Assembly (NCBI RefSeq): GCF_016433145.1
Contig: NC_058133.1
Location: forward strand, 250,630,020 to 250,680,148
Direction: 5' to 3'
Source: Gracilinanus agilis
Lineage: Eukaryota
DNA length: 50,129 nt
In this document: positions 20,714 through 50,129 of the stretch, in pieces
How positions within the stretch are numbered: position 1 is the stretch's first letter
How the letters are laid out: each line of letters starts with the position of its first letter
Position numbers and translations under genes: made by a program
Notes under the pieces: model-generated
Seen by the model: only the letters and a program-made list of their open reading frames with translations
Database searches by the model: none
What the model was told of the DNA's origin: nothing

Positions 20714-43990
<23,277 letters not shown>

Positions 43991-44597: not shown

Positions 44598-44683
44598 GTC
44601 CATCTCTGGGTGGTCACAGACTGGAGAAGTGGGGGTATCTGTAGTGTCTCCCCCTCCCTCTCTTCCCCAGTTTCCTAAGTCGG

Positions 44684-47600
44684 CTACATCTTCCACTGAA
44701 CAGCGTCCTCCTCCTGACTCCAGCGTAGACGAAGTGTCTCATCTGGGTGATGGGGGGAATTTATGGGGGGTTAGGGTTAGGGAGAGTTATTGGGGATGGG
44801 GCAGGGGCGTAGAATGCAAGGGAATGGGAGTTCATTTATTACTGAACAGAATAACTCCCAAAGAATGAAAAGGAGGCTCCCATCTTCATCTCTTACTATT
44901 GTTATTCTTAATGATGTTACTTTTAGAAAGCCCCATTACACTCTTAAGGCACTTTTACATATATTATCTGTTTTGGTCACAGAAAAATTGAGGCCCAGAG
45001 AGGTAAAGGAACTTATCCAAGATCCAAAACTAGGAAGAGACCATCCTGGGATTTGAACTTGGGTTTTTCTATCTCCAAGTCCAGGGTTCTTTCCACCAAC
45101 CCATAGTAATATTTACAGTAAAGAAAACCTTTCTTCTGTTTACTGTTTTATAAGGCTGATTTGCACATGATATAAACATTGGGGTGGCAGAAGTTCTCTC
45201 ATGCAATGAGAAAGGAAGTCATTGCTGCCCCCCAACCCAGTTTAACTGTGACCTTGCAATTGCAGCATTAGTTCCCCTTCTCCCTCCCAGCATATCTCAG
45301 GTCCAACCCTGCTCTGTGACTCACGCCTTCGTTCGGGCCCTCCCGAGGCCCTCTGACTTTCCCCAGCATCTCTGTCTGGAATCCCCGAGCTCTTCCAGCT
45401 CAGTTCCTTGGTTATCAGCCAGTGACACCAGCCAGACATCACAGGGGACCCACTGCGCTTCTGGGGTAGGGCTGTGCCTGGGAAGTTGGGTGGGGAGGGT
45501 AGGAATCAGACCATGAGTTCTCTGGGCTGTCAGAAGGAAAAGAGGAGGCAGACCCTAGGGGGATCTAGAATAGGGTAATTGGGGGAAAGTTTGAGAAGGG
45601 GTTCTTGGTTGGGTGGGAAAAAAGTAGAAGGGATAGAGTTGGAACTAGAAGTAGGCAAAATAATCAGCCAACAACTGCCTATAGCATGAAGAATGGAGTA
45701 GGGAATGGAATGCATCATGTGATTTCCATTTTTTAGGATTAAAACACAACTGATATTTATGCTTCCATTTATCATTAATATTTCTGTTGGGTTTAAATGA
45801 GCTGCTAGTTGGCACAATGGATAAAGTGCATGGACCTGGAGTCAGGAAGACCTGAGTTCAAATGCAGCCTCTAACATTTATTAGCTATGTGATCCTGGGC
45901 AAATCACTTAGTCCTGTTTGTCTGGGTTTCTTCATCTATAAAATGAGCTGGAGAAGGGAATGGCAAATCACTCTGGTATCTTTGCCAAGAAAATTCCAAA
46001 TGAGATCACAAAGAGTCTGACATGCCTGAAATGACTAAACAACATTATGGCTTTAAATAATGGAAAAGTCTTTAAAACAAACAAACAAAAAAAAAAACCC
46101 AATACATATCTCTGTGGGGAAATAGGGGTGGGGGATGTGCAACAAGGGGCATTAAAAATTTTTTTTTATAAATGTCTACATTTTTAATGGCAGGAAACAC
46201 CAGTCTACTGTTCCTTAGATACTTATTTTGCATCACTAAATATTTGTGTTAAAGGGAAGACTCAAAGCCTCCCAAATACACTCACTAAGGGCATTGATGA
46301 ATCTTGACAAGGGGAAAAGGAATAAGCATTAATACCTACTAAGTGCCAGAAACTGTGCTGTGTCTCTTTCACATATTATCTCATTCGATCCTCTCAACAA
46401 CCCTGAAAGCTATTGTTCCAATTTTACAGTTGAGAAAAGAGAGTCCATGGTCACACAGCTCCTGACTGACACTAAATTTTACATCAGGTATTTCTGATTC
46501 CAGGCACTTCTCTGTCCACTCACTGTACCACCTATAAATGCATGTATATGTATGTGAGTGTGGGAGGAGTTAATGGGAAACATTCCTTAAATGGATATCA
46601 GGAAGGAACCTACCAGGAAGAGGACTGGGGTGGAAAGCAGTGATGGGTATATCTGGGGAAAGCTGGGAAAGTGGAGGGGTTTGGAGAACATAGGGAGTCA
46701 CTTAAGGATCTTCTAGGGAAGGGTAGTGTCATGGGCCCCTCACCAGGCTGAGACTGTGCTATAGTGATAGTCAGAGGCTTCTCTGTAGCCTTCTGTTCTC
46801 CATTGGATGCCTGTCCAGTAAGACCAAGCAGGTGGACTCCCTGGGAGGTCAGGGGCTTCTCTATTACCCAGGTCAATCCAGAGGTGCCTGTAAGGACCCT
46901 GGGGTTCAGATATTGGAAGGCAGGCATCTGACCCCCTAAGCCAATATCTCCACCTTCCACTCCAGTTAGTCATTACCTGGTCTGCAAATCTACTTCCCCC
47001 ATCTATACATTTAGTGAAAGGACCCCAGCTCCCACCCTGAGCCCTAACACTATAAAGTATTACAGCTAGAAGAGACCTTAAGTCACATTAAGTCTAACTC
47101 CTTTATTTAACTCATGACAAAATAAATCAGCCCAGATTACAGAATAGACTCTTGAAGGTCACACACAAAGCAAGTCAGTGCCAGAGCTGGTACTAAAAAT
47201 TCTTGGTCTTCCTGACTCCTAATCCACTGCTTCTCTCACAATTTAGGGCTGCCTCACCATCTCTCAGCTTCTTGTATCCTTTTCTAGATCTGTGGGTTTT
47301 GCCAACTTCAGGTATGTCCCTTTGCTGTAATAGTCCTGCTCTGGTAGGGGCTGGGGCAAGGTGTCTCTCTCCAACCCCCATTCAGAGGTATCTGATGATT
47401 CTTAGATTAACCAGGATCTCCTGAACATCTCTTCCTTTGTCAGATACATTCTACTCCCTACCCTTTTTCTACCTTGGCAGGTCCTAAGTCTTAAGGCATT
47501 TAACTTAAAATCCCTTGTCTAGTCTCATTTGCTTCTCTAATTTTTTATGTTTACACCAACACCTTAATTAACTGTCCCTCTTCATTGGGAAGTACCCTCT

Positions 47601-50072
47601 GAGGTCTTTATTCCCTCTCACTCTTGGATCCTCTACTCTAAAGGGGATCAGGAACATTAGGCCCCCTTCTCTGCCCAGAATCTCTTCCCCACAGAGCTTT
47701 ATAGGAGAATCTAATCTCTGTGAGAGGGGGAGTGGGAAGAAGGGGGAAGAACCATGATGCTCAATACATATATGCTCAATCAATTCCAATGTAGCAAGGG
47801 GTTGGAGTATCCTTAAGAATGGATCCTATAGCTTCATCCCATGCATATTCCAACTCTCTGCCTTCCTCACTTCCCACCCTCATTTCCTCTATCTCATTTG
47901 GGATGTTCTCATTCTTCCCTACCCCACCCTCCAATTAGAGACTGGGGCTTAGACTCAGGACTTGTAGTATATCAGCCAACCCTAGAATTTGTGCCTTAAA
48001 TAAAGATCCTGCTTTGTCTTTTCTCCTGGGGTGGAATTCGGGAGGTCATCAGGAAGTAAGACAAAAAGAGGAATGATGAATTCATAATTCCCATGAGTCC
48101 CTGATACTAATAGCAAGGCTGACTAGCCTCTAAGACTGCTACTAATGCAGTTCTTAATCAATCTCTTTCGTCCATCCCTTTCCCTCCTGTCCCCCTACTC
48201 TTAACCACCACTTTCTGTCTTTCCTTCCTTCTCTAGTTGGGAAATCCAGTTGGGATCTGGGACCACCACCACTTTCTGTCTTTCCTTCCTTCTCTAGTTG
48301 GGAAATCCAGTTGGGATCTGGGACCCTTCCATAGAGGTTAAATGAGCCAGATATTTTCTTGGGAAACCTAGAGAGAACTAACTCACCTGGGGGCTCCTCT
48401 TCATCATCCTGTACAGCTAATTTCTGAGCTTTGAGGAACTTCCCCTCATCATAGTGAGCCTTACGATGCCGCTCAAAATCATTTTGCACTGTGGGATGGG
48501 AGAGAACTAAGCCCTTGGGACCAGTAGTTGAGCCTCACCACCCCTGCCCTACCCCTTGGCTGAAAGTCTCACTTTTTTTAGATGTTAACTTGTCCTTGGA
48601 ACCTGTGTTGTTATCTCCAAACTGAAGAACTTTGGGGTAAAAACTGTCCAATGATGCAAGCCTGGGGGAAGGGGAGTGGGGGGAAGAGAGCACTGAGGGC
48701 CCTGGAGAGAGGGAAGTGGGGATGGGGGTAGGCCCTGGAGAGAGGGAAGTGGGGATGGGGGTAGTGGTGGCAGAGGGCCTCCCAATGGGGAGAGAAAGCT
48801 ACAACTCCCAATATCTCTCAAGGGCAGATGACTCTACCACCAACTGCGCCTTTATATCAGAGCCTAATGGGAGCTGTAGTTTCTTCCATTACATGGGTCC
48901 CTGAAGGGAGTCCCAATGGACCCAAGGGTTGGGTGCTGGCCAGACTCGCCTGGGTCCTTCATCAAGGAGAGCTGAGGCCAAGGAGCCCCCACCTCTCAGC
49001 AAGCGCTTCAGGTGACACTGCCTGTGAGGTCCCTGCTCTCAGATCCTCTTCACTGTCTTCCAGCCTAAGAATGTGGGGTGTGGCAGGGAAGAAAGGTGAG
49101 TGCCTTGGGAAAAAAACAAGCATCTATCCATCCAGACTGATCCCCTCCCCCCCCAACTTCTGGTGACTAGCTAAGATCTTAAGTCTGAAGCCCTAGGGGC
49201 AGGATGGGACCCTGGGGAGAAGAGTAGTATGAGGCTTGTCACAGCCAAGGTCTGTGTCCCGTTTTCCATGTACTTGGTGAATGGGGACCTGTGTTTGGCA
49301 TGTGACCTGCGGTAGGGTGTGCTGGGCTCATCCACCTTCATGAGTCCGTAGTCCTTGCCCAATGGGTGGTATGTGGCCAAGATATTCATCTCATCCCAGT
49401 GTTGGGACTTCTTCCTGGATTGGGAGAATCATGGAGAGGAGTGTCCTGAGTTCCCCTCCAGAACTCTAGTGCTTCCTTTCTCTTGTCAGCCCCCAGCCCA
49501 AGAGATCTTGAGAACACTAAGCTGGGAGTTGGTTTCTAGTATGAAGGATTCCAAGTCCAAAACAGACAACCTGGGCAAGTTAAACTCTTTTATCTCAGCT
49601 TTCTCAACTGAAGTTGGTCCATTCCCTTCAGCTTCAAATCCCTTGATCCTTCAATTTCCCTCACTCCTTTTTTGGACCTCATCTTCCAGGAGTCCTCAGG
49701 GAGTCACCCTCTTCCCTCTCTGCCTATTCCCTCTCCCACGTGGCACGCACAGTTCTTAAGGAATCCCTCCTCTCCCATCTCATCCCAACCTCTTTTTATC
49801 CCTTTCTCTTCCCCATCTCTCCGCTCCTCCCGTCTGCCCCCTTACTTCTCCCCAATGGGGACTCTCTGCACCATAATGGTGCTGGTGTTCTTCAGGATGC
49901 CCCGGGGCCGCTCATCAGTGGAGCTGGAGACTGAACATGGGCTGAGCTCCCCGGAGTGCAAGCTGGATTCGGACAAATGCAGGCTAGCGGCAGGCCCCTC
50001 CTGAGTGTCGGGCGCCGTCACGTGCAGGCCACCACCCCCTCCTGTGGCCCCCACAGCCTCCTGCTTCTCCAT
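44684..50072 (-). CDS. Protein phosphatase inhibitor-2 (PPP1R2/IPP-2 family) paralogue with long C-terminal extension, positional equivalent of mouse 2810408A11Rik; 9-exon model, about 348 aa
   Basis: Exons 50072-49846, 49414-49307, 49064-48993, 48661-48573, 48488-48387, 47350-47258, 46887-46744, 45477-45325, 44742-44684; all GT-AG, summing to 1047 nt in one open frame. I-2 motifs: [49 protein letters not shown]. Strong Kozak at 50072 (A at -3, G at +4). Exons 1-5 are well supported; exons 6-9 rest on splice sites and phase only. Confidence 0.8.
48204..48325. repeat. Perfect 61-bp tandem duplication
   Basis: 48204-48264 identical to 48265-48325. Confidence 0.95.
48698..48763. repeat. Perfect 33-bp G-rich tandem duplication
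   Basis: GGCCCTGGAGAGAGGGAAGTGGGGATGGGGGTA twice (48698-48730, 48731-48763). Confidence 0.95.
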
Positions 50073-50129
50073 CGTGCCCCTCCCCGAAGCCGGGGGCCGC
50101 CCTCAGCTGCCCCGCCCCGCCCCTCCGCC
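49970..50129. promoter_or_regulatory. Edge of a CpG-rich promoter with GC boxes; probable bidirectional promoter shared with NEURL4 beyond the window
   Basis: CpG-dense end of window with CCCGCCCCGCCCC at about 50111-50123 just upstream of ATG 50072; NEURL4 assignment is by synteny only. Confidence 0.6.

What the first reader, a model, noticed from the sequence alone, without database searches (positions are those of the whole stretch)
47258..47400. Exon 6 hides a duplicated I-2 inhibitory helix in a frame the splice phases do not use
Seen: 47350-47258 is a 93-nt phase 1-1 exon (CTTGCCCCAG / GTGAGG) open as [32 protein letters not shown], which fits the model. An overlapping frame reads [28 protein letters not shown], and YYSKGTYLK aligns with exon 5 HYDEGKFLK; that frame stops at TGA 47266-47264, 6 nt before the donor. 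I recall a YYSKGxYL motif in the mouse protein, unverified. Inference: exon 5 was duplicated, and this lineage either switched reading frame, uses weaker phase-1 acceptors at 47400 or 47391 to read the helix frame as a truncating/NMD isoform, or the assembly lacks one base (a 1-nt insertion before the TGA would carry the helix frame to the donor in phase 1). A two-helix inhibitor or a frame-switched exon would both be unusual.
Basis: partly seen in the sequence, partly recalled or inferred. Interest (0 to 1): 0.75.

Follow-up and report, generated by a model that had tools for sequence, protein, structure and literature searches.

The report
Decayed second-helix exon of opossum I-2 paralogue
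The "hidden" reading frame is what remains of an ancient exon that gives a second PP1-inhibitor-type helix to a sperm-specific inhibitor-2 paralogue in monotremes and placentals. In this opossum the exon no longer fits the reading frame, and every annotated marsupial transcript leaves it out.

Summary
Coordinates, both peptides, the TGA at 47266-47264, the AG at 47400/47391/47350 and the GTGAGG donor are all as described.

The gene is the orthologue of mouse 2810408A11Rik. This is a testis-specific inhibitor-2 (IPP-2) paralogue lying between NEURL4 and ACAP1.

The likeness of YYSKGTYLK to exon 5 is not above chance on its own (helix-1 profile E=3.1). Monotreme and placental orthologues carry a second motif (DFERxRRAYYSKGQYLR; LQRKEYYSKGRYLR..ELEEDTEDE) on a phase 1-1 cassette exon placed exactly here. 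A profile of that exon, built without marsupials, picks the ORF 47401-47267 as the best of 2901 six-frame ORFs (E=7e-4). None of 300 shuffled introns comes near that score.

So the helix duplication is real but older than crown mammals. It is not a change in this lineage.

In this opossum the exon is disabled:
- It is 143 nt from the ancestral-type acceptor to the donor, which is 2 mod 3.
- It has a TGA 6 nt before the donor.
- Its acceptors are poor, and prolines sit in the helix.

All nine marsupial protein models I retrieved (Monodelphis, koala, wombat) skip it. The 93-nt frame-switched exon has no homologue.

The parts
49846..50072 (-). Exon 1 of the I-2 paralogue (ATG 50072-50070), with the SILK-type motif RGILKN
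   Evidence: tblastn of Monodelphis XP_007483260.1, 96% identity; boundaries checked
49307..49414 (-). Exon 2: [17 protein letters not shown]...DEPSTPY (degenerate RVxF region)
   Evidence: Pfam IPP-2 PF04979, E=2.1e-16
48993..49064 (-). Exon 3
48573..48661 (-). Exon 4
48387..48488 (-). Exon 5: helix 1 ([19 protein letters not shown]); ends in phase 1
   Evidence: Pfam IPP-2 profile positions 98-130, E=8.2e-6
47258..47400 (-). Remnant of the ancestral helix-2 cassette exon, taken from the ancestral-type acceptor (AG 47402-47401) to the donor. It is 143 nt, which is 2 mod 3
   Evidence: Helix-2 profile top hit, E=7.3e-4; 0 of 300 shuffles; blastp 44-50% identity over 22-29 aa to placental orthologues. 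Its first residues ESS match the placental exon start DSS. Position between exon 5 and the LTWVIE exon
47267..47401 (-). Helix-frame ORF of 45 codons, preceded by TAA 47404-47402
47306..47332 (-). Core motif YYSKGTYLK
   Evidence: matches YYSKG[RQ]YLR of placentals and monotremes
47264..47266 (-). TGA that ends the helix frame 6 nt before the donor
47252..47257 (-). Donor GTGAGG, the best-scoring GT of 72 in intron 5 by a crude matrix
   Evidence: matrices recalled from memory, rough
47258..47350 (-).
   Evidence: No homologue, best E=1; acceptor score -4.5 against -0.5 to 6.1 for the gene's real acceptors; absent from all marsupial isoforms
46744..46887 (-). Next annotated exon ([13 protein letters not shown]...), which is exon 6 of Monodelphis isoform X1; phase 1-1
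   Evidence: tblastn 100% identity
45325..45477 (-). Exon with the [13 protein letters not shown] motif; phase 1-1
44684..44742 (-). Last coding exon ([18 protein letters not shown], stop TAG 44686-44684)

Best explanation
The segment 47400-47258 (minus strand) is the marsupial counterpart of an ancestral mammalian cassette exon of the 2810408A11Rik-type inhibitor-2 paralogue. In monotremes and placentals that exon is phase 1-1 and can be skipped. It encodes a second copy of the I-2 inhibitory (IDoHA/HYNE-type) helix, YYSKGxYLR, followed by an acidic run.

In this opossum the exon still has its ancestral frame open for 45 codons, its core motif, and a good donor. It can no longer serve as a coding cassette. 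Its length is 2 mod 3, the ancestral frame ends in TGA 6 nt before the donor, its acceptors are weak, and prolines interrupt the part that forms the helix in other species.

The main mRNAs therefore most likely skip it and join exon 5 to 46887 or to later phase-1 exons, giving a one-helix protein. Any inclusion would give a stop-containing transcript.

Shown here: the homology, the position, the frame arithmetic, and the absence from annotated marsupial proteins. Inferred: that the exon is skipped in this animal, and that the remnant has no function.
For: - Gene identity: IPP-2 domain in exons 2 and 5. The window's exons are 84-100% identical (95-100% apart from the short, gapped exon-3 match) to Monodelphis LOC103099279 proteins. 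The orthologue family includes proteins named 2810408A11Rik, and the gene lies between NEURL4-like and ACAP1 genes.
- Second helix in the orthologues: platypus and echidna have DFER(Q/R)RRAYYSKGQYLRSG directly after exon 5, and platypus isoform X3 skips exactly that block, so it is a phase 1-1 cassette. In placentals, isoform pairs from tenrec, tree shrew, whale and camel define the same cassette directly before the LNWVxE exon.
- Homology of the remnant: profile E=7.3e-4, rank 1 of 2901 ORFs; 0 of 300 shuffled introns; blastp E about 7e-5 to 5e-4; same spacing between YL and (D/E)LE(E/K)DT; correct position in the gene.
- Helix 2 is a copy of helix 1: hhalign P=8.9e-6. The best PDB match of the platypus block is I-2 residues 133-173 of 2O8A. 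AlphaFold predicts both as helices in platypus.
- Disabled state: 143 or 134 nt, TGA 47266-47264, acceptor scores -5.6 and -2.4 against real ones of -0.5 to 6.1.
- Skipped in annotation: Monodelphis X1-X3, koala X1-X4 and two wombat models all lack it.
Against:
- No genomic DNA of another marsupial was available. I therefore cannot say whether the frameshift is shared, recent, polymorphic or an assembly error.
- The remnant is well preserved for a dead exon: 45 codons without a stop or frameshift, 44-48% identity to placentals (about what I estimate by eye, uncomputed, for the still-coding exon 46887-46744), and the best donor in the intron. By rough reckoning this argues against loss in the marsupial stem, and it leaves room for recent loss or residual use.
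- Annotation pipelines tend not to report isoforms with premature stops, so absence from protein models is weak evidence against inclusion.
- The splice scores come from matrices I recalled from memory.
Confidence: 0.62

Rival explanations
1. The exon is still used through the weak upstream acceptor (47400 or 47391). The TGA then acts as the stop of a short two-helix isoform of about 244 aa (exons 1-5 plus 45 residues), or it marks a regulated unproductive (NMD) isoform.
For: The helix frame is open over the whole stretch from the ancestral-type acceptor to the TGA, and both acceptors give phase 1. The donor is the strongest in the intron. The core motif and the DLEKDT stretch are kept. Some placental isoforms also end shortly after helix 2, for example Otolemur P0070 and Myotis davidii P0090.
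Against: Acceptor scores are far below the gene's real acceptors. The stop lies upstream of three exon junctions, so by the usual rule decay is expected. No such protein is in the 5.8-billion-protein collection for any marsupial. The sequence PQPLP sits where the helix begins in other species.
Confidence: 0.14
2. The assembly, or the sequenced individual, lacks one base near the 3' end. The real exon is 144 nt, open, and phase 1-1, so this opossum makes a two-helix protein as monotremes and placentals do.
For: One added base before the TGA would carry the frame to the donor in phase 1. The preservation of the ORF and the donor would then be explained.
Against: There is no long homopolymer at the site; the longest run is AAAA. 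A DNA run holds 97% of the sampled words of the 5.5-kb stretch, but this does not test the site itself. The tail after the shift (KKLRD) does not resemble the placental EDEQQ tail. The acceptors stay weak and the prolines stay in place. None of the three Monodelphis isoforms retrieved contains the exon, and they come from a different assembly (GCA_027887165.1).
Confidence: 0.1
3. Frame-switched exon: the 93-nt exon 47350-47258 is spliced in and read as APTRAG...KLRDG. It would be a new peptide overprinted on the old helix exon.
For: Length is a multiple of 3, it is open in phase 1, it has CAG|...|GTGAGG borders, and the last 9 nt before the AG are pyrimidine-rich.
Against: No homologue in 121 orthologues (best E=1). 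It is absent from all nine marsupial isoforms. There are 46 such open candidates in this intron by chance, and a shorter one (47335-47258) scores better.
Confidence: 0.06
4. Chance resemblance: the ORF has nothing to do with the second helix of the orthologues.
For: The match is short (16.6 bits). Against helix 1 alone it is not significant (E=3.1).
Against: It is the top hit of 2901 ORFs at E=7e-4. None of 300 shuffles exceeds 9.2 bits. It has the correct strand, order and neighbourhood in the gene, the same spacing to the acidic stretch, and a matching exon start.
Confidence: 0.03

Closest known systems
Mouse 2810408A11Rik and its mammalian orthologues (testis-specific IPP-2 domain protein; PMC3597327)
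   Same: Same gene: IPP-2 domain, the same neighbours (NEURL4, ACAP1), and the same exon order and C-terminal motifs (W.WL..K.L.W and ETLRL.W.QEE..WKM).
   Different: Placental proteins are 400-520 aa. They have an N-terminal extension, a linker of about 90 aa and an intact helix-2 exon. The opossum gene has no trace of the linker, and its helix-2 exon is disabled. The one paper on the gene notes only the IPP-2 domain and no second motif.
PPP1R2 (inhibitor-2) IDoHA helix with the HYNE sequence, PDB 2O8A/2O8G
   Same: Helix 1 (HYDEGKFLK) aligns with I-2 residues 138-160. The platypus helix-2 block aligns with I-2 residues 133-173 as its best PDB match. Both are predicted helical. In I-2 this helix lies over the PP1 active site, and the mutation HYNE to AAAA abolishes PP1 binding (PMC11561318).
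   Different: Helix 2 reads YYSK where I-2 reads HYNE, so His becomes Tyr and Glu becomes Lys. Nobody has tested whether it binds PP1. Canonical I-2 has one such helix.
Pseudo-exons, or lineage-specific loss of a cassette exon
   Same: An ancestral alternatively spliced exon that acquired a frame defect and a stop, and that is absent from the lineage's annotated mRNAs.
   Different: The remnant keeps a long open frame and a strong donor. A residual role as a stop-containing 'poison' exon is therefore not excluded.

Membership tests
Inhibitor-2 family (Pfam IPP-2, PF04979): the gene as a whole | SILK-type motif (GILK) near the N-terminus | tested here: met
   RPRGILKN in exon 1
Inhibitor-2 family (Pfam IPP-2, PF04979): the gene as a whole | Degenerate RVxF region KSQKW followed by [11 protein letters not shown] | tested here: met
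   [17 protein letters not shown] in exon 2; Pfam E=2.1e-16, above the curated cut-off
Inhibitor-2 family (Pfam IPP-2, PF04979): the gene as a whole | Inhibitory helix with an HY(N/D)E sequence | tested here: met
   [16 protein letters not shown] in exon 5; Pfam profile positions 98-130, 27 bits against a cut-off of 25
Helix-2 cassette exon of 2810408A11Rik orthologues: the segment 47400-47258 | Core YYSKGxYL(R/K) | tested here: met
   YYSKGTYLK at 47332-47306; profile E=7.3e-4
Helix-2 cassette exon of 2810408A11Rik orthologues: the segment 47400-47258 | Lies between the helix-1 exon and the L(T/N)WV.E exon, on the same strand | tested here: met
   48387 > 47400-47258 > 46887
Helix-2 cassette exon of 2810408A11Rik orthologues: the segment 47400-47258 | Acidic run (ELEEDxEDE) after the core | tested here: inconclusive
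   DLEKDT is present at the same spacing, but then comes RS and the stop; the EDE part is missing
Helix-2 cassette exon of 2810408A11Rik orthologues: the segment 47400-47258 | Phase 1-1, length a multiple of 3, helix frame open from acceptor to donor | tested here: not met
   143 nt (or 134 nt), both 2 mod 3; TGA 47266-47264
Helix-2 cassette exon of 2810408A11Rik orthologues: the segment 47400-47258 | Included in at least one mRNA isoform | not testable with these tools
The exon is absent from the nine marsupial protein models retrieved
I-2-type inhibitory (IDoHA) helix: helix 2 of the family | Helical segment that ends at the HY.EG-like turn | tested here: met
   For platypus: AlphaFold helix 158-177 with pLDDT about 70, parallel to helix 1 at 132-146. 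Not tested for the opossum remnant, because a joined model was not built
I-2-type inhibitory (IDoHA) helix: helix 2 of the family | HYNE-type sequence (His-Tyr-x-Glu) | tested here: not met
   YYSK in all species; only the Tyr and the following Gly are kept
I-2-type inhibitory (IDoHA) helix: helix 2 of the family | Binds PP1 across the active site | not testable with these tools
   Needs binding or inhibition assays, or a complex structure

The most novel reading that the evidence does not exclude
Marsupials did not simply lose helix 2. They turned the ancestral coding cassette into a switch. Inclusion through the weak acceptor ends the protein right after the second helix (a short two-helix inhibitor of about 244 aa) or sends the mRNA to decay. 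Skipping gives the one-helix protein with the W.WL tail. At family level, the 2810408A11Rik proteins of monotremes and placentals would be the first I-2 relatives with two inhibitory helices. They could engage two PP1 molecules, or toggle between two modes on sperm PP1.
Probability: 0.12. Interest if true: 0.6.

Novelty: new variant of a known kind. Interest (0 to 1): 0.42.

Why it matters
Inhibitor-2 is one of the oldest PP1 regulators, and its single helix over the active site is essential for binding. This check shows that a testis-specific paralogue has carried a second, alternatively spliced copy of that helix since before the monotreme-therian split.

The library of papers I could search holds one paper on this gene and none on the YYSKG motif.

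In this opossum the copy is disabled, and no retrieved marsupial protein model carries it, which makes a natural comparison. If one-helix marsupial proteins and two-helix placental proteins behave differently towards sperm PP1, that difference points to what the second helix does.

For annotation the lesson is practical. The 93-nt 'exon' should not be added to the opossum model on sequence grounds alone.

Tried and rejected
- **Reads.** No junction or indel evidence was obtained.
  - After no letters of 44983-45025 went to any database, pattern, paper or findings search.
  - By my slip, the local six-frame file still contained them. From then on they were masked in scripts.
- **Marsupial genomic DNA.** I tried look-up of encoding contigs for Monodelphis, wombat and sugar glider. 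Each time the answer was 'file too large'.
- **Independent assembly check.** I looked up the 62-aa ORF 47381-47196 as an exact product. It is not on record.
- **Pfam.** A scan of both frames of the segment gave no hit. The motif is too short for the IPP-2 model.
- **Is the segment a repeat?** It has no second copy in the window. I recognised the SINE next to it from memory only.
I rejected it: E is 14 or worse, the same nucleotides give the far stronger helix-2 match, and the placental block belongs upstream of the exon. The placental linker has no trace in the window.
- **The hit at 26152-26262.** This helix-1 profile hit ([10 protein letters not shown]) is an isolated 10-residue match and not a PPP1R2 retrocopy.
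- **Rfam on 45100-50129.** Nothing.
- **Joined models.** Whole-protein searches used the Monodelphis and monotreme proteins that the tools returned. One search joined the exons inside a local script only to check frame arithmetic.
Full report
**What is there**

On the minus strand the window carries an intron-containing inhibitor-2 paralogue.

- Pfam finds the IPP-2 domain in two open stretches. One is [17 protein letters not shown]...DEPSTPY (E=2.1e-16). The other is [16 protein letters not shown] (E=8.2e-6, profile positions 98-130).
- A word search with the exon 5 stretch returned Monodelphis domestica 'protein phosphatase inhibitor 2-like' isoform X3. Its cluster also holds isoform X1 of LOC103099279.
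- tblastn of these proteins on the window, followed by a check of the splice sites, gives eight exons: 50072-49846, 49414-49307, 49064-48993, 48661-48573, 48488-48387, 46887-46744, 45477-45325 and 44742-44684.
- Exon 5 ends in phase 1. The three following exons start in phase 1, and the two internal ones also end in it. This explains the exon-skipping isoforms X2 and X3.
- The gene lies between a NEURL4-like gene and ACAP1.
- The window's exons are 84-100% identical to the Monodelphis proteins, and 95-100% apart from the short, gapped exon-3 match. The genome is therefore an opossum very close to M. domestica, though not the assembly those proteins come from.

**The observation**

**Is the likeness more than chance?**

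Not against exon 5 alone. A profile of helix 1 from non-marsupial orthologues scores the ORF 47401-47267 at E=3.1, and it ranks fourth.

- A search with the Monodelphis protein found about 600 relatives. Several of the best are named 2810408A11Rik.
- Placental orthologues carry LQRKEYYSKGRYLR(C/S)..HPELEEDTEDE about 90 residues after helix 1. Platypus and echidna carry DFER(Q/R)RRAYYSKGQYLRSG directly after exon 5.
- The hidden frame aligns with this block at 44-50% identity over 22-29 residues.
- A profile built from 54 distinct placental and monotreme blocks, with no marsupial, picks the ORF as the best of 2901 six-frame ORFs of the window (16.6 bits, E=7.3e-4). Exon 5 comes second.
- None of 300 shuffled copies of intron 5 exceeds 9.2 bits.
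- The ORF lies where it should, between the helix-1 exon and the exon that begins (G)TSGLTWVIE, which is the counterpart of placental LNWV.E.

**Exon structure of the ancestral block**

- Platypus isoform X3 lacks exactly (E)RDFERQRRAYYSKGQYLRSGNNTASEDYSDEDSNE(N). The junction codons change as expected for a phase 1-1 cassette.
- Isoform pairs from tenrec, tree shrew, blue and Rice's whales and camel show the same for placentals. There the exon starts with D-S-S and ends directly before the LNWV.E exon.
- The opossum ORF starts E-S-S at the AG of 47402-47401, with 23 residues before YY against about 25 in placentals. It also keeps the six-residue spacing between YL and (D/E)LE(E/K)DT.

The acceptor before 47400 is therefore the likely ancestral one, and the hidden frame is the ancestral coding frame.

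**Is helix 2 a copy of the I-2 helix?**

Four results say yes.

- The helix-1 and helix-2 profiles align in register (hhalign P=8.9e-6, probability 83%). The blocks were anchored on the motif, so the register is partly given.
- In monotremes the two read [17 protein letters not shown] and DFERQRRAYYSKGQYLR.
- The platypus block alone finds, as its best PDB match, residues 133-173 of inhibitor-2 in the PP1 complex 2O8A. At E=0.27 this is weak, but the place is right.
- AlphaFold on platypus isoform X1 with a 26-sequence alignment predicts an otherwise disordered protein with helices at 132-146 and 158-177. Each ends at the HY.EG or YYSKG turn, with pLDDT about 70.

In canonical I-2 this helix lies over the PP1 active site, and HYNE to AAAA abolishes binding (PMC11561318). 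Helix 2 has YYSK in place of HYNE. Whether it works the same way is open.

**Age of the duplication**

Monotremes, placentals and this opossum remnant share the motif, so the duplication predates crown mammals. It is not a change in this lineage.

Amphibian 'inhibitor 2-like' proteins (axolotl, newts, a caecilian) group with this paralogue. They carry a second stretch, IHLRLAQKLLEQE, that resembles the second half of the I-2 helix. I did not pursue this.

**State of the exon in this opossum**

- From 47400 or 47391 to the donor is 143 or 134 nt. Both are 2 mod 3, whereas a phase 1-1 cassette needs a multiple of 3.
- The ancestral frame ends in TGA six bases before the donor.
- By a crude log-odds score, using matrices recalled from memory, the donor is the best of 72 GT sites in intron 5 (5.1; the gene's real donors score -1.1 to 8.5).
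- The acceptors score -5.6 (47400, an AAG), -2.4 (47391) and -4.5 (47350), against -0.5 to 6.1 for the real ones.
- The sequence [10 protein letters not shown] stands where other species have the helix-forming FERQRRA or LQRKE.
- All nine marsupial protein models I could retrieve join exon 5 directly to later exons or read through its donor: three from Monodelphis, four from koala and two from wombat.

**The 93-nt reading**

Its peptide has no homologue among 121 orthologues (best E=1). Intron 5 contains 46 open phase 1-1 AG..GT candidates, and a shorter one at 47335-47258 outscores it. I found nothing in its favour beyond the arithmetic.

**How old is the loss?** (inference only)

Forty-five codons without a stop or frameshift, identity to placentals about what I estimate by eye (uncomputed) for the still-coding neighbouring exon, and the best donor in the intron all fit poorly with 80 million years or more of neutral decay. 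My rough estimate puts the chance of no frameshift and no stop at a few per cent. This points to a fairly recent loss, or to residual use. It keeps the truncating/NMD isoform and the one-base error alive as rivals.

**What could not be done**

One local script still held them in its six-frame file, and later scripts masked them.
- Marsupial genome DNA was not retrievable.

**Verdict**

It is partly wrong: the duplication is ancient, and the favoured 93-nt exon is unsupported.

Most likely this is a disabled, skipped remnant of an ancestral second-helix cassette exon (0.62). The rivals are residual inclusion as a stop-containing isoform (0.14), a one-base error (0.10), the frame-switched exon (0.06) and chance (0.03).

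What is new is at family level. A conserved, alternatively spliced second I-2-type helix in the 2810408A11Rik proteins is not described in the literature I could search.

Noticed in passing
window 48204-48325: Perfect 61-bp tandem duplication in intron 5 (48325-48265 and 48264-48204, 100% identical), so a very recent event.
   Followed up: partly
window about 47100-47255, minus strand: A MIR-like SINE seems to start right at the remnant's donor (GTGA|GGCAGC...GCAGTGGAT.AG..GGAGTCAGGA.GACC...GTGTGACC). I recognised it from memory of the consensus. blastn finds no second copy in the window. If it inserted into the 3' end of the old exon, it could be what shortened the exon.
   Followed up: partly
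window 44617-44760, minus strand; koala proteins P0005, P0123: Koala models read through the donor of the WCHWL exon. They then read the last exon in another frame (MRHFVYTGVRR...KLGKRGRGR), which is open in the window too. Opossum and placentals keep ETLRL.W.QEE..WKM. This may be an annotation artefact or a real alternative tail.
   Followed up: no
proteins P0130, P0133, P0257 (axolotl, caecilian): Amphibian 'inhibitor 2-like' proteins carry IHLRLAQKLLEQE 25-45 residues after HY(N/D)EG. This resembles NIKLARQLISKD of canonical I-2. The caecilian also has the WYNWFRIKG tail motif. The opossum remnant's YLKLAK is closer to NIKLAR than the placental YLRSCS is.
   Followed up: no
protein P0127 (armadillo, 1094 aa): A read-through fusion model of this gene with ACAP1. 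It shows that the tandem arrangement is kept in placentals.
   Followed up: no
window 46888-48386 (intron 5): There is no trace of the roughly 90-residue linker that separates the two helices in placentals (best E=9.4, elsewhere in the window). Monotremes lack it too, so it is probably a placental addition.
   Followed up: yes
hit list: Among the 120 best of the 616 matches (the only ones listed), marsupial orthologues appear for only four species (Monodelphis, koala, wombat, sugar glider). No human or other catarrhine protein appears there, although lemurs and a galago do. The gene may be lost or unannotated in some lineages.
   Followed up: no
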